In this document: one piece after another, positions 21,419 to 45,255 of the stretch
Position numbering within the stretch: position 1 is the first letter of the stretch
Layout: each line of letters starts with the position of its first letter
Assembly (NCBI RefSeq): GCF_020745735.1
Contig: NC_083409.1
Location: 18,496,341 to 18,560,340, forward strand
DNA: 64,000 nt
Origin: Hemiscyllium ocellatum
Lineage: Eukaryota
Direction: 5' to 3'
Made by a program: the position numbers and the translations under genes
The notes under the pieces: model-generated
What the model was told of the DNA's origin: nothing
Seen by the model: the letters and a program-made list of their open reading frames with translations, nothing else
The model's database searches: none

Positions 21419-21706
21419 GTATCAGTGAGGACATCATCATGACCCAGTCTCCCCCACTGCTGTCAGTGGGACTGGGCCAGACCGTAACCATCATCTGTAC
21501 GGCCATTAGCAGCTACCTTGCTTGGTACCAGTAGCGAGAAGGTCAGAAACCCTCTCTCCCGATCTACAATGCAGCAACTCAACTCACAGGAGTCTCTGAG
21601 CAATTCACCGGCAGTGGATCAGGGACCAGTTTCACCCTGACAATCAGCAACATTCAGAATGAGGATGTTGCTGACTATGACTGTCAGCAGCATTACAGCT
21701 GGCCTT
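21419..21706 (+). pseudogene. IGKV: Ig kappa V exon, pseudogene (in-frame TAG 21532-21534)
   Basis: AG acceptor 21417-21418; [94 protein letters not shown]. Cys23, Trp35 and Cys88 present. Confidence 0.95.
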
Positions 21707-21734
21707 AACGGTGATACAGGGCCATCCAAAAATC
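21707..21734 (+). promoter_or_regulatory. V 12-spacer RSS, defective
   Basis: Heptamer AACGGTG (consensus CACAGTG), 12-bp spacer ATACAGGGCCAT, nonamer CCAAAAATC (consensus ACAAAAACC). Confidence 0.88.
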
Positions 21735-22128
21735 TCAATATGCACAGCACCACCACCTGTACTAACACATTCCACATTTTTGTGACATATACACAGTTCC
21801 ACCTCCTGCACTGACACATCCACAGTTATATGTAAATGAAATTGAACAAATTACCCCATACCGGGATTGTCACTGTACATGACACACTCCAGTCCCTGTG
21901 GTGTCCACCGCTCACTGAAGGCCTCAAGTTTCCCTCTTGCATTCCATGGCCACATGTGAAGAGCAGCTGCAAGATTTAACATCGAAAAATAAAGTTCACA
22001 AACTGCACAAGCCCAGCTGAACACTACCGAGAGAGACAGAGGGAGGGCAGGGAGAGGGTGAGACTAAGTAAGAGACAGAGAGAGAGAGAAGGAGCGGTTG
22101 AGAGTGATGGAGGGAAGCAGAGAGCTGA

Positions 22129-22167
22129 GGTTTTTGTACAGCCTCTGCACTGGGAGCTCTCACTGTG
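22129..22167 (-). promoter_or_regulatory. J 23-spacer RSS, consensus-perfect
   Basis: GGTTTTTGT 22129-22137, exactly 23-bp spacer, CACTGTG 22161-22167. Confidence 0.97.
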
Positions 22168-22202
22168 GCTTACGTTCTGTAATGGAACCAAGCTCAGACT
22201 GA
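22168..22202 (+). other. IGKJ: Ig kappa J segment with altered FGxG motif
   Basis: LTFCNGTKLRL-(S), donor GTAAGT at 22203; phase-1 splice to C gives ...KLRLSRENSQP. Confidence 0.95.
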
Positions 22203-23234
22203 GTAAGTAAACCTCAATCCTCTGTTATTAACCCTGTCAATACTGAAATACAATTTATAAAACACAAATACTGAATTGTTGAAGTGTTGCAGTGATGGAA
22301 ATGTTTGATTGAGGAACACCGCATCCCATACGGTGTACACCTGTATTTCTTTAGTCCTATAACCCCATTAAAAAGCAAGATATAAGTCAGTAAGTTTTAC
22401 TCACCGTGTGGAGGAGCTCTGTCCATTTGCAGCCTGTGGTCCCATTCCTGCAGCATGGAATGAAATCAGTGAGTAGCCTCCTGCCAGTCTCAGTGTGACA
22501 GACACGGGGCAGATTTTAATGTGAGCTCTGGCTCCCTGTCCCAGTCTCTGATCCCACTGACCTCAGCAGCAGCACAGTAAGACACCGAGCTCCTACCTCC
22601 CCCAGCTTTAACTCTGCTCAATCACATAATCACAGAATTGTCACATTGCACGAGGAGGCCATTCTGCCCATCCTGTCTGAACTGGCTCTCCGAATGAGCA
22701 ATTCACTGAGTGTCATTCTCCTGCCTCCTCCCTGTCACCCTGAACATTGTTGCTTTTCAAATATCAGTCTCATTCCCTTTGGAATGTTTTAATTGAAGTT
22801 GCCTCCACCACGCTATCAGGCAGTGCATTCCACACCTTAACCACTCACTGGCCAAAATGTTGTTCCCCATCTCACTTTTGTGACTTTTCCCAATTGCCTT
22901 CAATCTGTGGTCTCTCAGTCTCAATCCTTTCTCAATTGGGAACATTTTCTTCCTATTTACTGTATCCAGGCCCCTCCGGATTTTAATTCCTCGAAGAAAT
23001 CTCCTCTCAGCCTTCTCCAAAGAAGTCAGTCCCAAATTCTCCAAACTATCTTAATAACTGATATTCCTCACCCCTGGAATGATCTTTGGGAATATTTTTT
23101 GCCATTTCTACAAAATTTCACCTGCTTCCTGAATGATTCACATTATCTATGTCCCTCATGATTTTATTAACCTCTGTATTGTCACCCCTCAGACTCTTAC
23201 ACTTGAGGGAAAACAGTCTCAGCTTTTCCAGCCC

Positions 23235-32898: not shown

Positions 32899-33227
32899 GC
32901 CGTGAGAACTCTCAGCCCAAGCTGACCCTGCTGCCCCCCTCCCTGGAGCAGGTCAATGCCAAGGGCACTGCCACCCTGGTGTGCTTTGCCAATCACTTCT
33001 ATCCCGATGAGCTGGAGGTGCAGTGGAAGAAGGATGGTGCAGTCATTTCGGACGGGGTTCAGACCAGCAACTACCTGCGAGCTTCGGACAGCACCTACAG
33101 TGTCAGCAGCCTGCTGACCCTCTCTGGGTCTGACTGGGAGTCCAACGCTCGCTTCTCCTGTGCCCTCACCCACGTGACCCTCCCCTCTCCCCTCAGCAAG
33201 AGCATAACGAGATCAGAATGTGTGTAG
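32899..33227 (+). CDS. IGKC: Ig kappa (NS4/type III) constant exon, open and intact
   Basis: TTTCAG acceptor; (S)RENSQPKLTLLPPSLEQVNAKGTATLVCFANHFYPDELEVQWKKDGAVISDGVQTSNYLRASDSTYSVSSLLTLSGSDWESNARFSCALTHVTLPSPLSKSITRSECV*. Both domain Cys, the Trp and the penultimate interchain Cys are present. Confidence 0.97.
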
Positions 33228-33750
33228 AGTGTTCAAGACAGTCTACGGAGGAGACACAACTTTAAATAGAACAGGGCTGAGCTGGCAGGACAAAGGTCAT
33301 TGTCAGCACTAAATGTCAACGCCCCTTCTTCTCAGGACTGACCGAGGGGACACTTCTGAGGTTTTGGAGTTAAGGTAGTTCATTGGGACAGCGTAGAGAG
33401 AGTCTTACCCTATGTAAAACCTCATGCTGTCCTTGTCCTGGGAGTGTTTGATGGGTCAGGGTTGACTTGTGATGCTAAGTAAAATCTCTTGAAGATGCTG
33501 AAAACTGTCAGCTGTACAAAACAATCTGAACCTCAGAAGTCTCTGCTTCAGTAAACCAGATCTCCTTCCTGCTCAGCCACCAGTTCCAATTTAAGGTTTT
33601 GTCACTGTTTAAAGGGACAGGATTCTCATGTTACTGAGAAAACCTCCACAAGTGTTTTCCTCAAGCACCATTGTGGCTGTGAATTTGAGCAGCTTCCTCT
33701 GTCTGGGCTGTTAATTTCAGTGTTTATTCTCCCAAAGTCAATCGAAACGG

Positions 33751-34875: not shown

Positions 34876-35339
34876 AGTGGGGCAGGATCATAGTTGACAG
34901 AATTTACAGTGAAATTGAGATGGCAACTGAGAAAGGTGAATATTGAGAGTGTGTTCTCAGTAAGGGAGGGATTTCAAAGGCAGTGGGCACTGTGCTCCCT
35001 AATGTGTTGCCTGATTACAAGGGGATTTTCTGGATCCAGGGTCATTGCAGTAGTGGCTGCCTGCCCAGCCAGTGCTGACTACCCATAGTCATATTTCAAT
35101 GGTCAATTAGCTCTACACTATGTGCAGTAATATTACCTTACAGAGAGGGGAGCTGTCTGAACGAGGGTGGTTGAATTCTTGCAGCCCCAAGAGGGGTTGC
35201 AGTGGATTAATGAAGGGTACGACTAACATGAAGGTGCCACCTTCTCTCCCCCTGCCTCAGCTGTGGTGACCCTTGGATTAAACTCACCACCATTTGGCTC
35301 TGTCTGTAATGAGTGAGTGGGACTATGCTCTTCTGGGAT

Positions 35340-36381
35340 TAGATTAGATTAGATTACCTACAGTGTGGAAACAGGCCTTTCGACCCAACCAATCCACACC
35401 GACCTTCCAAACAGAAACCCACCCGACCCATTTCCCTCTGACTAATGCACCTAACACTATGGGCAATTTAGCATGGCCAATTCACCTGATTTGCACATTT
35501 TGGACTGTGGGAGGAAACAAGGGCACCCGGAGGAAACCCAGGCAGACACAGGGAGAATGTGCAAACTCCACACAGACATTCACCCGAGGCTGGAATCGAA
35601 ACTGGGAAACTGGTGCTGTGAGGCAGCAGTGCTAGCAGGGATGATGACCACGTTGCTGGGTGATGGAGGGAAGGTCAACCTCTCCCAAAGGCAGCACAAG
35701 CTGGATTGAAGGAGTATCAAGAGTAAGCATGAGGAGATTGAGGGTGACAGAAGGAGGGGGATGGTTGGCAGGTTGTTATTCAGAGTCAGGTCCCAGAGTA
35801 TCAGTCCTTCTGACACTCCCCTTTTTATCTGTCAGCCAAGGCTCCCTGATTGGACAAGGTTAAACCCCATCAGGGAACTCATATTTTATCAGAAAAAAAA
35901 ACACTTTATCGAACAAGGAGCTCAAGAGCTAAAGGACACTGAACAATATGAATGGTTTGAAAGATTCCTTTACGAACATCGCAAATGAGATTTGGGAAAG
36001 AACCTCTTTCACTCAGACTGTGGTGGGAATCTGGAATGGACTGTCATAGAATCCCTACAGTGTGGAAACAGGCCATTTGGTGCAACAAGTCCCGACCAAT
36101 CCTCTGAAGAGAAATTCACCCTAGATCCACTCCCCTTGGCTATTTCCCTTGACTAACACACCTAACTAACACATCCCTGAACACTATGGGCAATTTTAGC
36201 ATGTCCAATTCACCTAACCTGCAAATCTTTGGATTGTGGGAGGAAACTGGGGCATACAGAGGAAAAACACACAGACACGGGGAGAATGTGCAAACTCCAC
36301 ACAGATACGTGGGGCTGGAATCGACCCGGGTCCCTAGTGCTGTGAGGCAGCAGTACTAACCACTGAGCCACCATGCCACCC
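35340..36381 (-). mobile_element. Two older V-SINE copies (35340-35636 and 36047-36381)
   Basis: V-domain and tRNA-head matches on the minus strand. Confidence 0.85.
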
Positions 36382-37329
36382 ATAAAAAAGCCCAAAGAGT
36401 TGAGCTTTCATTCAGCTCCATGAGTCTGATGTGATACAAACTATAAACTCACAACCCTCTGTCAGGGAAGGTAGTGGAGGGTAGATACCTTACAACCCTT
36501 GAATATCATAACATTCATGGATTTGGGACATCGGCAGGAAATTGGGATGAAAGTGCCTTCAGTTGTAATTATGTTCATGCAGACTCAATGGGCCGAAGGG
36601 CCTTTTCTATGCTGTATCCATGCTGAGAGGGCTGTGCAGGTTAATGGTGATTAGTATAGCCTGTCGAAGGTGGCAAATGCATGATCAAGGGTCAGAGGAA
36701 ATGGTTCAAGCTTCAGTGAAGGCCCAAGTAGGAGCTTGGGAGGAGGGTCAAGGCTAATGGAGACAAGGCCAATGGAGACTGAGCGAGGGGACAGAGTGCT
36801 GGTTGGCATCTCCAGGGGTTGTAGTGAGGCATATGGGGACAAGAGGGGAGTGTGTAGGGAGCGAGTACAGTTTCAGATGAAATGCGACCTTTGCCAGCAG
36901 CAGCATGGCCTTCAGCACCAGCGGGTGTCCCTGACTGTGTCAGGCTCACTGACTGCTCTCTGTGTGATTCCACACAGCCACTCGTCTGGTCACCACGCAA
37001 AGTTTTGCTCATGTTTATACTACTGGCTGCAGCACAGTCTGCACCCAGCATCTGCATCTTCTGTCGATGCCACTGTCTATACACACCGTCTGCAGCCTCC
37101 GTTTACACCCTGTGTCCAAACCCACTGTCTACACCGCTGTCTGCACCCTCCATCCACACCTCCTATCTTTCTGCTGTTGTCAGATTGTATACAATGATTC
37201 CATTGAGCTTACGGCATTTTAGAATTTTAGAACTGGCAATGATTGTCCTCTCACCCTGACCTTCAAAGTCTGTCTTCCATAATGAGGTGTTTAATGTTAA
37301 TTACTGAATGCCATTTGATTTCTGTGATG

Positions 37330-37820
37330 GCAGGACTGATGTATAAAGAGAGTTGAGTTGGTGAGGATTGTGTTCATTGGAGTTTAGAAGAATGAAGGAA
37401 GGGAATCTTGTAGAAAGCTATAAAATTGGAACAGGACGAGACATGTTAGATGGAGGAAGGATGTTCCAAATGGTGGGGAAGTCCAGAACCAGGGCTCATA
37501 GTTTAAGGTTAAGGGGTAAACTCTATAGGATAGAGATGAAGAAAAATGTTTTCACCCAGAGAGTGGTGAGCCTGTGGAATTCGCTGTCACAGAAAGTTGT
37601 TGAGGCCAAAACATTATGTTTTCAAGAAGAGGGTAGAGATAGCTCTTGTGGCTAAAGAATCAAGGGATATGGGGTAGGGAGGGATTACAGTGTAGTGCTC
37701 GATGTTCGGCCATGACCATAGATAGATTCTTGATGACTGAAGGGATGAAATGTTATCAGAGAATGTAGAGTTGAGGTTAAAATCAGATCAGCCATAAGGG
37801 CCGAGTGGTCTCCTTTTGTT
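37330..37820 (+). mobile_element. CR1 3' fragment
   Basis: ORF 37368-37655 SLEFRRM...KNVFTQRVVSLWNSL. Confidence 0.85.
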
Positions 37821-38071
37821 CCTTGCCCATATGTTGCCTCATACACTTACACACAATCGAAGACTGTCATTTGTATTTTCTACCTGCAGATTAAGCTGCA
37901 TGTGCAATAGGCCTCATCTGTACAGTGTTTTCTCCAGCCTTTCACCATGATATGGTTAAGATAATGGTCCCATAATCAATCCATTAACTTTGTAAGTTAA
38001 TTTAGTTAAAGCAATAAAACACATTACAAATCATGAAGCAGACATTACAGCAAGCAAGAATGGACTGCACT

Positions 38072-38993
38072 GAGGCTCAGTGGTCAGCACTGCTGTCCCA
38101 CAGCACCAGGGACCCAGGTTCGTTCCAGCCTCGGGCAACTGTCTGTTTGGAGTTTGCACATTCTCCCCATGTCTCTGTGGGTTTCCTCTGGATGCTCCGG
38201 TTTCTTCCCACAGTCAAAAGATGTGCAGGTTCGGTGAATTGGCCAAACTAAATTGTCCATGGTGTTCAGGGGTGTGTGGGTTAGGTGCAGTAGTCAGGGA
38301 ATATGTGAGTAATGGGGTGGGGGAGTGGGATGCTCTTTGGAGGGTCAGTGTGGAGGCCTATTTCCACACTGTAGGGATTCAACGAATTGATCTTGGTCCG
38401 TGCAGCTTGCAGGCTCACAGATGACTAACTGGTGGGTAGAGTTCAACACCGTACATACACAGGGGTGGATTTTCTTAAAGGTAATGTGTTCACACAGCAC
38501 ACAGCTACTGAACATCAAGGCAAGATAGTTACATTCTCTCTTGTTGGAGACAGTCATTGCCTGGCAGCTGTGTGGCACATATGTAACCTTATTCATGTTC
38601 CAAACCCACATCTCTATCAGTAAAATGCTTTGGAACATCCTCTGGTGACAAAATGTGCAATACATTTGGGGTGGCACGATGGCTCAGTGGTTGGCACTGC
38701 TGCCTCACAGCGTCAGGGACCCGCCTCAGACAGGTCTGTGTGGAGTTTGCACGTTCTCCCTGTGTCTGTGTGGGCTTCCCCCGGGTGCTCTGGTTTCCTC
38801 CCACGGTCCTAAAGATCTGCAGGCTGGTAAACTGGCCATGCTAAATTGCCTATAGTGTCCAGGAATGAGCAGGCTAGGTGGATTAGCCATTGGAAAATAC
38901 AGGGATAGCATCGGGGTCTGGATGGAATGTTCTTTGGAGGGGTGGTGTGGACTCGATAGGCTGAATGACCTACTTCCACACTATAGGGATTCT
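38072..38993 (+). mobile_element. Two older V-SINE copies (38072-38380 and 38668-38993)
   Basis: V-domain GTGGAGTTTGCACGTTCTCCC; tail CCACACTGTAGGGATTC. Confidence 0.85.
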
Positions 38994-39101
38994 GTGATAC
39001 AAATGTAAGTTCCTTCTTTCCATTCTAGCCCTGAAGCATGCATGTGGTTCTGTCTCATATCCACTCAAGAGATGGCAACCCTTTGAAGACAGGAGCAGCC
39101 T

Positions 39102-39222
39102 CTATTCTTTTGGAAAGTACTTCTTCCACTCTGTGTCCTTCACAGCCTTGTAGACAACAACAATGAGGTCAGGAAATAACCCAAAGCTATAATCTTCTGG
39201 ACTCTTCATTAAACTGTGGAAC
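39102..39222 (-). pseudogene. RNASEL: RNase L terminal coding exon (KEN domain C-terminus)
   Basis: Acceptor TGTACTTTTCAG; 1 nt + FHSLMKSPEDYSFGLFPDLIVVVYKAVKDTEWKKYFPKE*. Aligns without gaps to recalled human [37 protein letters not shown], with the same phase-2 intron. Confidence 0.8.
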
Positions 39223-39544
39223 CTGAAAAGTACAATTAAGGTCCAAGTCAATGAAGATATTTCTCAGCAATCCCTAAATGCTGAGTTTTAATACTCAGCA
39301 GGCCCCAGGAGTCAAAATAACTGAGTAGATCATTGCTCTGAATTGCTCATAAATGTCACCTTCACATTTCAGGAGGCTTTGATCAAAAAGGTTGCTTACT
39401 CCTCTCCAAAATACAGCTTAAAATCAGCTCCAACTCCCAACCATCCAGCTGAGAGCAGAGGCCTGTACAAACTGGAACCTGGTCAGTGGGAGCACTGTCA
39501 CCTCTGTCTCAGAAGCTTTGACTATTTAAAATAATGTCTTACTC

Positions 39545-40370
39545 AGAGAGTCATTCAGCACAAAACAGACCCTTCGGTTCAACTCATCCGTGCCAACCAG
39601 ACATCCTAATCTAGTTCCATTTGCCATGATTTATCCCATATCCCTCTAAACCCTTCCTATTCATGGACCCATATAAATGATGTAATTGTACCAGCTTCCA
39701 CCACTTCCACTGGCAGCTCATTCCGTGCATGCACCATCCTCTGCATGAAAAGTTGCCCCTTAGTTCCCTTACAAATTCTTCCTCTATTACCTTAAACCAA
39801 TATCCTCTAGTTTTGGACTGACATACCCTGGGAAAAAGACCTTGGATGTTCACCTTATCGATGCCCCTCATGATTTTATAAACCTCCATAAGTTCACCCC
39901 TCAACCTCCAACACTCCAGGGAAAGTAGCCCCAATCTATTCAGCCTCTCCCTGTAGCTCAAACCCTCCAACCCCAGCAACATCCTTGCAAATCTTTTTTT
40001 GTCCCCTTTCAAGTTTAAAAACATTATTCCTTTCGCAGGAAGACCCGAACTGAGCCCTGTATTCTCAAGGTGTCCTCACCAATGGCCACTTTGGTGGACA
40101 GCCAGAACATGACATCCCAACTCCTATACTCAATGCACAGACCAATAAAGCAAGCGTACCAATCACCTTCGTCACTATTCTGTCTATCCATGGCTTTCAA
40201 GGAACTGGGAGCCTGCACTCCAAGATTTCGTTGCTGAGCAACACTCTCCAGGAACCTGCCCTGATTTGCCTTCCCAAAAAGCAATGTCTTACACTTATCT
40301 AAATTAAACTCCATCTCCCACTCCTTGTCCATTGGCCCATCTGAACACACATTGATCATACATTACAAAC
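39545..40370 (-). mobile_element. CR1 3' fragment
   Basis: ORFs 39611-40024 and 40024-40359 (WEMEFNLDKC...LFSLECWRLRG). Confidence 0.85.
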
Positions 40371-40379
40371 TGGAACATA

Positions 40380-41070
40380 TGGAAGGCATTGGTGAGACAC
40401 AACTGCAGTCTTGTGTCCAATTGTGGTCTGCTTATTAGATTAGATTACTTACAGTATGGAAACAGGCCCCTCGATCCAACAAGTCCACACTGACCCTCCC
40501 AAGAGCAAACCACACAAACCCATTCCCTTATACCTAACACCATTTGAGGAAGGATGTGGTGGCACTGGAGGCCGTTCCGAGGATGTTCCCCAGACTGATT
40601 CCAGGGATGAAAGGGCTGTCCCACGAGGAGCAGTTAAATAGATTGCGCTTGGACTCACTGGAGTTTAAAAGAATGAGGAGGGATCTGATTGAGGGATAGA
40701 AAATGTGAAAGGGGATTGAGAAGGTGGATATTGAATAGATGCTCCCCCTTGTGGGACAGTCTGGAACAAGAGGGGATCGATATCGAGTGAGAGGAGGTCG
40801 GTTCAAAACTGAGCTGAGGAGAAACTACTTCTCCCAGAGGGTTGTGAATCTGTGAAACTCAATGCCCCAGAGTGCAGTGGAGGCAGAATCAATCAACAGG
40901 TTCAAGAACAATGTGTTTCTGATTAAACATGAGATAAAGAACAATGGGAAGCAGGCAGGAGAGTGGAGTTGAGACCAGGATAAGATCAGCCATGGTCCTG
41001 TTAAATGGCGGAGTGGGGTCGAAGGGCTGAATTGCCTCCTCCCGCTCCTAATTCCTATGTTGAGCACACA
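40380..41070 (+). mobile_element. CR1 3' fragment with a minus-strand V-SINE tail at ~40436-40540
   Basis: RRNYFSQRVVNL motif; TAGATTAGATTACTTACAGT tail insertion. Confidence 0.8.
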
Positions 41071-42640
41071 GTCAAGGCTGACACTGCAAAACTGAGGGAG
41101 CTGTTGTCTTTCAGGTGAGATACAAAACAGAGGTCCTGCCACAATCTATCAAACTGTACTATCTCCTCCAGTGACAAATGCTGGAATTTGAATTCAAATC
41201 ACAAAGCAAGCCTCATTAATGGTGACCACGATAATGATCCCTGAATGCTGTCCAGCCTCAGCCTTACCCAGTCTGGAGTTCATGTGACTCCAGCCCCACA
41301 GCAATCTGGTTAACTCTCAGGTGCCTTCTGAGAGGCCACAGCAAGGCCAGCAGTTCAAGGGCAATTAGTCTAGGGTAACAAATGCTGATCTACGCCAGTG
41401 ACACCCACCTCCCAGAAAACAGAATGCAACAGAGATTGGTGTCAGCCACATTTGTCAGATCAGACTCCCAATGAGATGGGGAGATGGTTAAAGTGTATTC
41501 AGCTCAGTATGGAACAGGTCCCCACTTGTTAACACATCATCACTGACAAAATAAGGGGAGAACACAGAAAACTAACAACGAGAACACTCAAATGTGGGAA
41601 TATCAGTGAGAATTCAGGCAACTGAAGGAAGATATGAAGAACTGCAAAGGAAGACAAAAAGGAAACAAGAGTTACAAAAAAGTGATTGAGAAAGAGACCT
41701 GCAAGGGGTCACAAGAATAACACAAATGCTTTACACGAAAATTAGAAAATCAAGGAGGCTCCAGTGCAATGTGAGCCCTTTAAAAACAAACTGGGAATTC
41801 CATGAATGAGACAAAGGGAATGGCCGATACATACAATAATCAGTTGTGTCAGTCTTTACAGTCAAGGAACGGGATAATGCAGCTTCCATTCCAGGGAGGT
41901 TAATAATGAATGGAAGACTGGAATTCACGAAACTTGATACTTGCCATGAAACAACATTGGAAAATGAGCGGCTCTAAAGGCTGACAGATCTCCAGGACCT
42001 TAGGGGTTTAAAGGAAGGGGGGGAAGAAGTTTCAGAGGTTTTTTCCCATCAGGTTCCAAAGCAATAACGATTCCTTTAGTTTGGAAAATGTCTTGCTGTA
42101 ACTCCACGGGTTGAAGAAAGATGAGAGAGGGAACCAAGGAAATTATATCCTGGTCAATCTAACATCTCTTTTAGGGGTTTCATTGGAATCTATAATGAAC
42201 AGCCGAGAGAATCAACATGTAGAGAATCGGAAATAGCCCATGTAGATTTGTGATGGGTAAGTTCTAACTAACAAACCAAATGCATTAAATAAAATAGTTG
42301 ATCGGATGTATAGGCTTATCAACTTTCAAAAGTACTCGATCATTTACCACAAAACAGTCTGCTGACCAAAGTTAAAACCCATGGGATTGAAGATGAATGT
42401 TTGACTTGGTTCGGAGGCTGGTTTAGTGATAGATAACAGAGAAAGAAAGTGACGAGTGGTGTTCCACAAGGATTCTGTGGTGAGGCCTTAACTACTTACT
42501 GTATGTATTAATGAGAATCATAGTTCCACATTGACACAAAGACTGATGGAATAGTAAGTGGTGAAGATGGTGTTTTTGTTTAAAACTCACTTGGAGGACA
42601 TGGGTGTTGCTGTCTGGGCCAGATTCCTAGTTGCCCTTGA

Positions 42641-44400
42641 GAATCATAGAATCATTATATGGTGTGGAAGCAGACCATTCAGCCCATCAACTTCACACCA
42701 TCCGACCAAACAGCATCCCATCTAGATCAGCCCCATCCCTGTAATGCTGCATTTCCCATGGCTAATCCACCCTGCCTGCACATCCCTGGACACTACGTGC
42801 AATTTAGCATGGCTAATCCACCAAACCTACACATCTATGGATTGTGTGGAGGAAACTCACTCAGACATGGGGAAAATGTGTAAACTCCAGACAGACATCA
42901 TCCCAGGGTGGAATTGAACCCAGGTCCCTGGCGCTGCGAGGGAGCAGCACTAACCACTGACCCACAATGCTGTCCTTTGCAAGGTGGTCGTGAGCTGCCT
43001 TCTTGAACCGCTGCAGTCCATGTGCTGTAGATAAACCCACAATGCCCTAAGGGAGGGTAGTCCAGGATTTTGACCCAGCGACACTGAAGGAACAGTAGTA
43101 TATTTTTAAATCAGGATGCTATGTAGATTAGGGTGGAACTTGAGGGTGGTGGTATTCTGTGTATCTGCTGCCCTTGTCCTTCAAATGGGAATAGCCTTGG
43201 GTTTGGAAGGTGCTGTCTCAGGAGACTTGGTGGATTTCTGCAGTGCATCTTGTCGATGGTGCACGCGGCTGCTACTGAGCATCAGTGGTGGAGGGAGTGA
43301 ATGTTTGTAGATGTGGTGCCAATCAAGCAGGCTGCTTTGTACTGGATGATATCAAGCTTCTTGACTGTTTTTGGAGCTGCGCCCATCCAGGCATGTGGGG
43401 AGTAACCCATCACACTCCTATTCAAAGCTTTACTGATCTTTTCTTAATTTATTTACAGGTTTGGGCATCACATGGTATGCCAGCATTTTTTGCCCAGAAT
43501 CAAGTGGGGTGGCACAGAGACTAGCACTGTTGCCTCACAGCGTAGGGACCTGAGTTCGATTCCACCCTCAGGCAGCTGATTTTGTGGTGTTTACATATTC
43601 TCCTGTGTCTGCCTGGGTTCCCTCCAGGTGATCTGGTTTCCTCCCACAGTCCAAAATGTGTGGGATCGTTGGAATGGCCATGGGAAATGCAAGGTTATAG
43701 GGGAGTGGGTCTGGTTGGGATGCTCTTTGGAGAGGCGGTATGGGCTGAATGGCCTGTTTCCACATTGTAGGGATTCTATTGATTTCTTCACTCAGTGGAT
43801 TGTGAATCTTTGGAATACTCATTCCCAGATACTTAGTCAGTACTTAGTAATTTGAATAAATTCAAGATAGAGATCACCTGCATGTGGGGAGGCAGTGGCC
43901 TAGTGGTATCATCACGAGATTGTTAATCTAGTGAGCCAAGTCATGTTCTGGGGGACCTGGGTTCAAATCCTGGTAAAGGCACAGAGTGGAATTCAAATTT
44001 TAACATCTCAAATTAAGATTCTAATGATGACAATTGTTTGGGGAGAGTCCCATCGAACCCACTAATGTCCTTTACACTGCTGTCCTGGTGTCATACTAAC
44101 TAACATATCACTCCAGACCACAGCAATGAAGAATCATTAAATCCCTACTGTGTGGAAGAAGGCTGTTCAGCCCATCAAGGCAAAGCAGCATCTCACCCAC
44201 AGCCATCTCCCTCTCCTATCCCTGGAGCCTTACACGTCCCATGGCTGATCCACCTAACCTGCACATCTTTGGACTGAGAGAGGAACCCCCCGCAGACATG
44301 GGGAGAACATGCAAACTCCACACAGACAGTTGCCTGAGGGTGGAATCGAACCCAGGTCCCTGGTGTTGTCAGGCAGTGGTGCTAGCTACTGTGATACCCA
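42641..44400. mobile_element. SINE/LINE cluster: V-SINEs 42641-42975 (-), 43506-43779 (+), 44131-44400 (-); LINE fragment ~42990-43420 (-); SINE ~43888-44125 (+)
   Basis: Direct similarity to other copies in this window. Confidence 0.75.
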
Positions 44401-44804
44401 TTCCACATCAGAGAGCCAAACGTCTAACCCCTTATTCCCAGACTGGGTCTCTGCTTTAGAATTCCCAAGTAGGGACAGATCCTCCCAAAATCTATCCTGT
44501 CAGGTCCCTGGAGAATTTGACATGTTTCAGTGAAATCTCCTCCCAACCTTCTAAATTCCAGGGATGAGATCTGCAATCTCCTCCTGGCTTCCCAGAGAAT
44601 CTGAGGATAAATCCCGTTCCTCACCCAGTCCCCCTCTTGATCCCGAGACAATCCTCTCAACCTGTCACATGAACTGTTGCTGGGTTTGATCATCTCAGTA
44701 AGAGTTTTAAGGAGGGAAAGAGAAAGAAAGGCTCTTTCTGCTTTGAATCAATGCTAAAAGTTGAAAAAGCAGGAAAATATTGCCAGCAACTATTGTTCAC
44801 ATAC

Positions 44805-44929
44805 TCTTTCTATTCATCAAAGTGCTGGATGAGGTTTCTTATGAATTTCAGGCCGTCACTGGTGGTGTCCTTATATTCTTTATTCTTGCCTTGTCTCTTG
44901 TTCATGTCATTTAGGAGAACGGAGTCAAC
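44805..44929 (-). pseudogene. RNASEL: RNase L penultimate exon (KEN catalytic core), disabled
   Basis: VDSVLLNDMNKRQGKNKEYKDTTSDGLKFIRNLIQHFDE*K+GA, donor GTATGT. Matches recalled human INECVMKKMNK...[21 protein letters not shown]. The acceptor reads CG rather than AG; in-frame TAG at 44810-44812. Confidence 0.85.
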
Positions 44930-45255
44930 CGAGAAGGAAACAAACAACAGAGTTTGTTTTCTCTGTTGATTGAATTCACCTTGTTTGCTCCTCTGCTCAC
45001 CTGAAGAAGGGGCGAGGCTTGTGTCTTATAATAAACCTGTTGGACTATAATCTGGTGTCGTATGATTTTTGGCCTTGGGGATTCCTGGAAACAAGGTGTT
45101 CAGTAAAGATAGGAAAGAGAGAAAATTGCGAGAAGTGGTGGGATGTACTGGAGCGTGACAGTGCTGACCAACCTTAGGCCCTGAGATATGATGGAGAGGA
45201 AGGGTGAACTCTACTGGGCTTTAACTCACTGTTACCAGAGTAAAACAGTGATTAG

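What the first reader, a model, noticed from the sequence alone, without database searches (positions are those of the whole stretch)
39102..44929. Hidden RNase L (KEN nuclease) exons between an Ig kappa cluster and CEP350
Two short minus-strand exons, missed by the ORF track, splice in frame (GA+G = Glu) to give VDSVLLNDMNKRQGKNKEYKDTTSDGLKFIRNLIQHFDE*KEFHSLMKSPEDYSFGLFPDLIVVVYKAVKDTEWKKYFPKE*. Seen: the exons, a GT donor, an AG acceptor on the last exon and a phase-2 intron. Known: the RNase L KEN domain has Y-x5-D-x2-KFIRN-x3-H (human Y655, R667, H672) and FPDLxxxVY, whereas IRE1 reads LLRAMRNKKHH. The intron positions match my recollection of human exons 6 and 7. The OAS-RNase L antiviral pathway is patchy in fishes (absent from teleosts), so its state in sharks is of interest.
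Basis: partly seen in the sequence, partly recalled or inferred. Interest (0 to 1): 0.85.

Follow-up and report, generated by a model that had tools for sequence, protein, structure and literature searches.

The report
Dead RNase L tail fragment
The two exons really are leftovers of the antiviral RNase L gene, but only the last two exons were copied next to an antibody light-chain gene and the copy is broken, so this is an ordinary dead gene fragment and not a hidden gene.

Summary
Minus-strand exons at 44929-44805 and 39222-39102 are RNase L KEN-domain exons. They are 95-97% identical in protein, and about 97% in DNA, to the last two coding exons of the annotated bamboo-shark and epaulette-shark "2-5A-dependent ribonuclease-like" genes. 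In the PDB they match only RNase L, never IRE1.

The "hidden gene" reading does not hold.
- The intact Chiloscyllium punctatum gene has seven coding exons within 25 kb. This window holds only exons 6 and 7.
- DNA homology to the intact locus stops inside intron 5, at window 45144. The 19 kb further upstream contain no ankyrin, pseudokinase or early KEN exons.
- The exon-6 acceptor is CG instead of AG.
- A conserved Lys codon (AAG) is now TAG.
- The invariant Leu of the DLLKFIRN motif is Gly.

Public DNA runs show many variant copies per individual. The CG acceptor is shared by at least 90% of the depth in two related species, while the TAG marks a subfamily seen in only one species.

The fragment lies tail-to-tail, 5.9 kb from an Ig kappa C exon whose own V segment is also dead.

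RNase L in cartilaginous fishes is already published and annotated. The scan has noted the same tail fragment at many other places in this genome.

The parts
44805..44929 (-). Relic of RNase L coding exon 6 (penultimate), 125 nt. It encodes the KEN segment with the Y...KFIRN...H motif.
   Evidence: Pfam Ribonuc_2-5A positions 44-78. 96.9% DNA identity to L001 37398-37526. 97% protein identity to Chiloscyllium RNase L-like.
44930..44931 (-). Destroyed splice acceptor: CG where the intact gene has AG.
   Evidence: Alignment to the intact C. punctatum locus reads TTCTAG|GTTGAC in L001 against TTCTCG|GTTGAC in the window. No alternative letter reaches 10% of depth in four DNA runs of two species.
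44810..44812 (-). In-frame TAG replacing a Lys codon (AAG) that is conserved in the bamboo- and epaulette-shark genes.
   Evidence: TAG-bearing contigs make up about 54-80% of depth in two runs of organism A and none in two runs of organism B.
44852..44854 (-). GGC (Gly) where the intact gene has CTC (Leu) in the D-L-L-K-F-I-R-N motif. All 16 cartilaginous-fish RNase L proteins compared have Leu here.
39223..44804 (-). Relic of intron 6, with an intact GT donor at 44804-44803 and an intact AG acceptor at 39224-39223. It carries SINE and LINE insertions. Parts are collinear with the intron of the intact gene.
   Evidence: Collinear blastn HSPs: window 43369-45077 = L001 38967-37241 and window 35818-39835 = L001 46215-42275. 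Reverse-transcriptase-like ORFs at 39611-40359.
39102..39222 (-). Relic of RNase L coding exon 7 (last), including the stop at 39104-39102. It encodes the FPDL...VY...FPKE tail of the KEN domain.
   Evidence: Pfam positions 96-125. Pig RNase L 676-711. 96.6% DNA identity to L001 42897-43013.
44932..45144 (-). Remnant of intron 5 up to the point where homology with the intact locus ends (the upstream edge of the copied segment).
   Evidence: Window 45077-44932 = L001 37241-37395 and window 45144-45078 = L001 36714-36780. Nothing matches beyond that. L001 exon 5 lies about 1 kb further on, at 35579-35713.
34981..39101 (-). 3' flank shared with the intact RNase L locus. It runs towards the Ig kappa C exon.
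   Evidence: 89% identity without gaps to L001 43016-50766, where the public contig ends.
32900..33228 (+). Ig kappa-type constant exon, open. It is convergent (tail-to-tail) with the RNase L relic, with 5.9 kb between the two stop codons.
   Evidence: C1-set E 1.6e-21. Sequence shows the acceptor and the stop. It is the only C exon in the window.
21427..22205 (+). V and J of the same light-chain cluster. V (21427-21705) has an in-frame TAG at 21532-21534, YDC in place of YYC, and a decayed heptamer. J (22168-22205) follows a 23-spacer RSS (22129-22167) and reads FCNG in place of FGxG.

Best explanation
This is a non-functional, DNA-level partial duplicate of the shark RNase L gene. A genomic segment of at least 10 kb was copied together with the adjoining Ig kappa light-chain cluster. 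The segment starts inside intron 5 of RNase L and runs through exons 6 and 7 and the 3' flank towards a convergent Ig kappa C exon.

The copy never had a promoter, ankyrin repeats, a pseudokinase domain or the first third of the KEN domain. It lost its exon-6 acceptor early, because almost all copies in two species share that change. It has since drifted, gaining a nonsense codon and a Leu-to-Gly change specific to its subfamily. It makes no RNase L protein.

Shown: the truncation, the lesions, the retained introns, the multi-copy state and the tail-to-tail Ig neighbour. Inferred: that the Ig cluster and the tail were amplified as one unit, and that the functional gene lies elsewhere in this genome.
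For: - Only exons 6 and 7 are detectable, with either a Mustelus or a Chiloscyllium full-length RNase L as tblastn query, or with the seven intact exons as blastn queries.
- In the intact C. punctatum gene all seven coding exons lie within 25 kb. The window offers 19 kb upstream and holds none of them.
- Collinear homology to the intact locus runs from window 45144 to 34981, including intron and 3' flank, and ends abruptly in intron 5. This is therefore a genomic duplicate and not a retrocopy.
- The acceptor is AG>CG, Lys AAG>TAG, and Leu CTC>Gly GGC.
- Unitigs from four DNA runs show many alternative letters per individual (up to 9 distinct contigs at one place), summed word depths of hundreds to thousands, and equal variant density in exon and intron: 9 in 123 nt, 9 in 107 nt and 7 in 92 nt. 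This points to a multi-copy family evolving neutrally.
- The CG acceptor shows no variant at 10% or more in either species. The TAG is confined to organism A. Organism B copies instead carry TAA one codon later.
- The exons differ from the intact gene by 8 of 246 nt. That fits constraint on the intact branch only (P = 0.05-0.35).
- An Ig kappa C exon lies 5.9 kb away, tail-to-tail.
- Unchecked scan notes place the same tail beside Ig kappa and CEP350 pieces at more than 12 other sites on this chromosome piece, and one follow-up reached the same verdict.
Against: - Transcription or use in a chimeric transcript is therefore not excluded by data.
- I could not read any second copy of the cassette. 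Co-amplification with the Ig cluster rests on this one arrangement, on multi-copy read evidence for the exon region only, and on unchecked notes.
- The copy number (tens) is a rough reading of uncalibrated contig depths.
- The species of the window is not known to me, and the location of its intact RNase L gene was not seen.
- Exons are clearly better conserved than flanks against the intact gene (3.3% against 11-13%, P = 3e-6 under equal rates). That could also reflect gene conversion or a period of constraint.
Confidence: 0.86

Rival explanations
1. This is the original RNase L locus of the species, decayed in place. The 5' exons were removed by a deletion or rearrangement and the rest pseudogenised, which would mean loss of RNase L in this shark.
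For: The 3' flank is shared with the intact C. punctatum locus for the whole 7.8 kb of flank that the public contig holds. No zebra-shark or whale-shark RNase L-like protein appeared among the hits, so losses within the order are conceivable.
Against: The exon region is multi-copy in every DNA run laid. In run X4 of the same organism, three contigs carry the intact AAG AAA reading. Intact genes are annotated in the three closest species, at 95-97% identity to these exons. Non-coding divergence of 11-13% from C. punctatum, against about 2-3% between organisms A and B as judged from word shares, fits a paralogue better than an orthologue. Scan notes report an open copy 12.7 Mb away (unchecked).
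Confidence: 0.07
2. This is a live RNase L gene whose upstream exons lie beyond the window across a very long intron, and the TAG and CG are assembly errors or alleles.
For: Shark introns can be long. The donor, the last acceptor, the reading phase and the catalytic Y/R/H of exon 6 are intact.
Against: Intron homology to the intact locus stops 213 bp upstream of exon 6, rather than continuing. The TAG and CG readings recur at high depth in independent runs from different studies. The intact gene keeps exon 5 only 1.7 kb upstream of exon 6.
Confidence: 0.03
3. The tail is exapted. It could serve as 3' exons of a chimeric transcript from the upstream gene copy on the same strand, or as a convergent transcription or terminator element for the Ig kappa gene.
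For: The exons are more conserved than the flanks against the intact gene. The fragment is kept in many copies. Scan notes describe in-frame 'mini-CEP350' copies nearby (unchecked).
Against: The acceptor needed for inclusion is destroyed in nearly all copies. Different subfamilies carry different stop codons. Variant density among copies is the same in exon and intron. The adjoining V segment is itself dead.
Confidence: 0.04

Closest known systems
Cartilaginous-fish RNase L (annotated '2-5A-dependent ribonuclease-like' of Chiloscyllium punctatum, C. plagiosum and Hemiscyllium ocellatum; family described by Chu et al. 2023, PMC10400998)
   Same: Exons 6 and 7 are 95-97% identical in protein and about 97% in DNA. 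They share the same intron position and phase, the same 3' flank, and the KEN motifs Y...KFIRN...H and FPDL...VY.
   Different: There are no exons 1-5, so no ANK repeats, no pseudokinase and no first third of the KEN domain. The acceptor is dead, there is a premature stop, the conserved Leu is replaced, and the sequence is multi-copy.
IRE1 (ERN1/ERN2) KEN domain
   Same: Same Pfam family (Ribonuc_2-5A).
   Different: No IRE1 chain in the PDB matches either exon at E<=10, while RNase L does. The sequence is near-identical to shark RNase L.
Truncated, unprocessed pseudogenes created by segmental duplication, as found in antigen-receptor and other tandemly amplified loci
   Same: It is a partial genomic copy with introns retained and a breakpoint inside an intron. 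It is carried along with a neighbouring amplified gene and is decaying neutrally.
   Different: Nothing essential. The particular passenger (an innate antiviral nuclease tail beside shark light-chain clusters) was not found in the papers searched.

Membership tests
RNase L (2-5A-dependent ribonuclease) | N-terminal ankyrin repeats that bind 2-5A | tested here: not met
   tblastn with full-length Mustelus and Chiloscyllium RNase L, and blastn with the intact exons, find no ANK-coding sequence of this gene anywhere in the 64 kb.
RNase L (2-5A-dependent ribonuclease) | Pseudokinase domain that mediates dimerisation | tested here: not met
   Same searches: nothing matches residues 430-690.
RNase L (2-5A-dependent ribonuclease) | Complete KEN (Ribonuc_2-5A) nuclease domain | tested here: not met
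   Only Pfam profile positions 44-78 and 96-125 of 127 are encoded. Each piece is below the gathering score (18.2 and 15.5 bits against 23.3).
RNase L (2-5A-dependent ribonuclease) | Sequence descent from RNase L rather than IRE1 | tested here: met
   95-97% identity to annotated Chiloscyllium and Hemiscyllium RNase L-like proteins. The PDB hits to this fold are RNase L only.
RNase L (2-5A-dependent ribonuclease) | Open reading frame with usable splice signals | tested here: not met
   TAG at 44812-44810 replaces Lys. The acceptor is CG instead of AG at 44931-44930.
Unprocessed (duplicative) pseudogene fragment | Intron and flank homology to the parent locus, truncated at a breakpoint | tested here: met
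   Collinear homology window 45144-34981 = L001 36714-50766, ending in intron 5.
Unprocessed (duplicative) pseudogene fragment | Disabling lesions and neutral drift | tested here: met
   Three lesions. Variant density among copies is equal in exon and intron. Exon divergence fits one-branch constraint.
Unprocessed (duplicative) pseudogene fragment | No transcription or translation | not testable with these tools

The most novel reading that the evidence does not exclude
The RNase L tail, the Ig kappa cluster and (according to scan notes) a shortened CEP350 copy form one segmental-duplication unit, amplified tens of times over more than 25 Mb of a bamboo-shark-like chromosome. If so, the founding kappa cluster sat tail-to-tail with the functional RNase L gene. 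The dead tails would then be neutral time-stamps, with a shared CG acceptor and subfamily-specific TAG or TAA, that could order and date the birth and death of shark light-chain clusters.
Probability: 0.5. Interest if true: 0.35.

Novelty: new member of a known kind. Interest (0 to 1): 0.14.

Why it matters
RNase L is already known, annotated and functionally tested in cartilaginous fishes, and this copy cannot make the enzyme.

It has two modest uses.
- It warns annotators that KEN-domain hits in shark light-chain regions are passenger fragments and should not be counted as RNase L genes or as gene-family expansion.
- If the co-amplification with Ig kappa clusters holds genome-wide, the tails give a neutral marker for reconstructing how shark light-chain clusters multiplied.

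Tried and rejected
- phmmer of the 39-aa last exon against 1.84 billion representatives gave one true hit (Mustelus RNase L-like) and two low-complexity repeats, P0002 and P0003, which I ignored.
- The genomic loci of the Mustelus, C. punctatum (new assembly) and C. plagiosum genes could not be fetched because the files are too large. Isoform X2 was not on record. Only the older C. punctatum contig, L001, was readable. It ends 1.8 kb short of where a C exon would lie, so I could not check that the intact gene also has a kappa neighbour.
- I searched the Ig C exon for homologues in order to fetch other cassettes. The search returned only short partial proteins, two of them filed under bacterial names, because of the length filter.
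Its Atlas neighbours are labelled Ribonuc_2-5A at 0.92, but it has no alignable similarity to RNase L. I treat the Atlas lead as false.
- A retrocopy was rejected because the intron is retained.
- Sequencing error was rejected because TAG and CG recur in independent runs.
- No paper describing RNase L fragments in shark Ig loci was found.
Full report
**Observation.**
- The penultimate exon runs from 44929 to 44805 (125 nt, 41 codons plus two bases) and is followed by GTATGT.
- The last exon runs from 39222 to 39102, is preceded by TTTTCAG and ends in TAG. The junction GA+G gives Glu and keeps the frame.
- Pfam Ribonuc_2-5A matches the pieces at consecutive profile positions, 44-78 and 96-125 of 127. 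Each piece is weak on its own, at 18.2 and 15.5 bits.
- Against all PDB chains, the KEN-family matches are pig and human RNase L at consecutive residues (pig 641-668 and 676-711). No IRE1 chain appears at E<=10.

**Identity.** A phmmer search with the last exon found an 811-aa Mustelus asterias protein with ANK, Pkinase and Ribonuc_2-5A domains.
- A search seeded with that protein listed full-length "2-5A-dependent ribonuclease-like" proteins from about 15 sharks, rays and a chimaera.
- The window's exons are 97% and 95% identical to the Chiloscyllium punctatum protein. They are equally close to the C. plagiosum and Hemiscyllium ocellatum proteins.
The exons are RNase L by descent.

**Why it is not a gene.** The older C. 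punctatum contig with the intact gene could be read as L001.
- tblastn places seven coding exons between 17811 and 43013 of L001, a span of 25 kb. The window's pieces correspond to exons 6 and 7.
- Neither tblastn with two full-length proteins at permissive settings, nor blastn with the seven exons, finds any other RNase L exon in the 64 kb. The window extends 19 kb upstream of exon 6, whereas in the intact gene exons 2-5 lie 1.7 to 15 kb upstream of exon 6.
- Collinear DNA homology covers intron 6, the 3' flank (to the end of the public contig) and 213 bp of intron 5. Window 45144 corresponds to L001 36714, and homology stops there, about 1 kb short of exon 5.
- Because the intron is retained, this is a genomic duplicate and not a retrocopy.

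**Lesions.** The base-by-base alignment (coordinates checked) shows three changes.
- The exon-6 acceptor is TCG|GTT where the intact gene has TAG|GTT. The AG is therefore CG, at 44931-44930.
- The Lys codon AAG, present in the intact gene, has become TAG at 44812-44810. All eight bamboo- and epaulette-shark isoforms read Lys there.
- CTC (Leu) has become GGC (Gly) at 44854-44852, within D-L-L-K-F-I-R-N. All 16 cartilaginous-fish proteins compared have Leu there.

They cannot function without the rest of the protein.

**Multi-copy state and age.** Logan contigs of four DNA runs were laid on 44700-45100: two runs of organism A from different studies, and two runs of a close relative, organism B.
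- The contigs are short (56-140 nt) and numerous, with summed word depths of hundreds to thousands and up to nine distinct contigs at one variant place. That is more than two alleles can give.
- Variant places are as dense in the exon (9 in 123 nt) as in the flanking intron (9 in 107 nt and 7 in 92 nt). Among copies, the exon is therefore not protected.
- No alternative to the CG acceptor reaches 10% of depth in either species. That lesion therefore predates the amplification and the split of A and B.
- The TAG accounts for about 54-80% of depth in organism A and none in organism B. Organism B copies mostly carry TAA at the next codon (44809).
- In run X4, three contigs read AAG AAA, as expected for the intact gene and undamaged copies.
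- Copy number looks like tens, but contig depth was not calibrated against a single-copy gene, so this is only an inference.

**Divergence.**
- Non-coding homology to the C. punctatum locus is 87-89% identical without gaps. The exons differ at 8 of 246 nt.
- That is significantly fewer differences than the flank rate predicts (P = 3e-6). It is nonetheless compatible with constraint acting only on the intact gene's branch (P = 0.05-0.35).
- All amino-acid changes that can be polarised on this copy's branch (Gly, stop, Val) are derived.

**Context.** An open Ig constant exon lies on the plus strand at 32900-33228 (C1-set, E 1.6e-21).
- It is convergent with the RNase L tail, with 5.9 kb between the stop codons.
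- Its V segment (21427-21705) has an in-frame TAG, YDC in place of YYC, and a decayed heptamer. Its J (22168-22205) follows a good 23-spacer RSS but reads FCNG.
- It is the only cluster in the window.
- The tail's 3' flank, which points at this C exon, is shared with the intact gene's 3' flank for the whole 7.8 kb of flank that the public contig holds. This suggests that the parent RNase L gene also has a kappa neighbour, but the contig ends before that can be seen.
- Unchecked notes of this scan report the same RNase L tail beside kappa C exons and CEP350 pieces at more than a dozen places across about 25 Mb of the same sequence piece. One follow-up concluded "dead RNase L tail fragment". I used these as leads. 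My own evidence covers the truncation, the lesions, the multi-copy state and this one tail-to-tail arrangement. I did not verify CEP350 in this window.

**Known biology.** Chu et al. 2023 (PMC10400998) report RNase L in all major jawed-vertebrate lineages except ray-finned fishes. They report concerted OAS/RNase L losses in ray-finned fishes and in frogs and salamanders. They also show that Callorhinchus milii OASa plus RNase L attenuates yeast growth in a manner that depends on nuclease activity. The presence of the pathway in cartilaginous fishes is therefore established, and this fragment adds nothing to it. I found no paper on RNase L fragments within shark Ig loci.

**What could not be done.**
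- The RNA test failed.
- No second cassette could be fetched for direct comparison.

**Verdict.** The object is a truncated, disabled, multi-copy passenger fragment of RNase L next to a decaying Ig kappa cluster. It is of low interest, with a modest side value as a marker of light-chain cluster duplication.

Noticed in passing
window 21427-22205 and 32900-33228 (+): The Ig kappa-type cluster beside the relic appears to be decaying as well. V has an in-frame TAG (21532-21534), YDC in place of YYC and a degenerate heptamer. J reads FCNG. The C exon is still open. J and C are 10.7 kb apart, with transposon insertions between them.
   Followed up: partly
window 45022-45077: A short element about 55 nt long, with summed contig word depth near one million in all four DNA runs of two species. 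It is one of the most abundant dispersed repeats of these genomes. It also lies within the last block of homology to the intact locus before the 460-bp gap.
   Followed up: no
It has no Pfam or PDB match. Its Atlas feature neighbours are plant clusters labelled Ribonuc_2-5A (0.92), but it has no alignable similarity to shark RNase L, so that label is probably spurious.
   Followed up: partly
proteins P0130 and P0131: Partial proteins filed under Aeromonas veronii and Salmonella enterica are 77-83% identical to this shark Ig constant exon. They look like vertebrate (shark-like) contamination in bacterial assemblies.
   Followed up: no
one search hit list: Full-length RNase L-like proteins appear for about 15 cartilaginous fishes, but none for zebra shark or whale shark, the other annotated members of the same order. 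This could be a limit of the search or a lead to a lineage-specific loss.
   Followed up: no
L001 36781-37240 and 46216-49915: Relative to the window's copy, the intact C. punctatum locus carries an extra 460 bp in intron 5 and about 3.7 kb in the 3' flank. These are insertions there or deletions here, and could serve as markers for ordering the copies.
   Followed up: no
window 44809: Most copies in the related species (organism B), and one diverged contig in organism A, read TAA at the codon following the Lys that is TAG here. Two subfamilies therefore acquired different stops at adjacent codons.
   Followed up: partly
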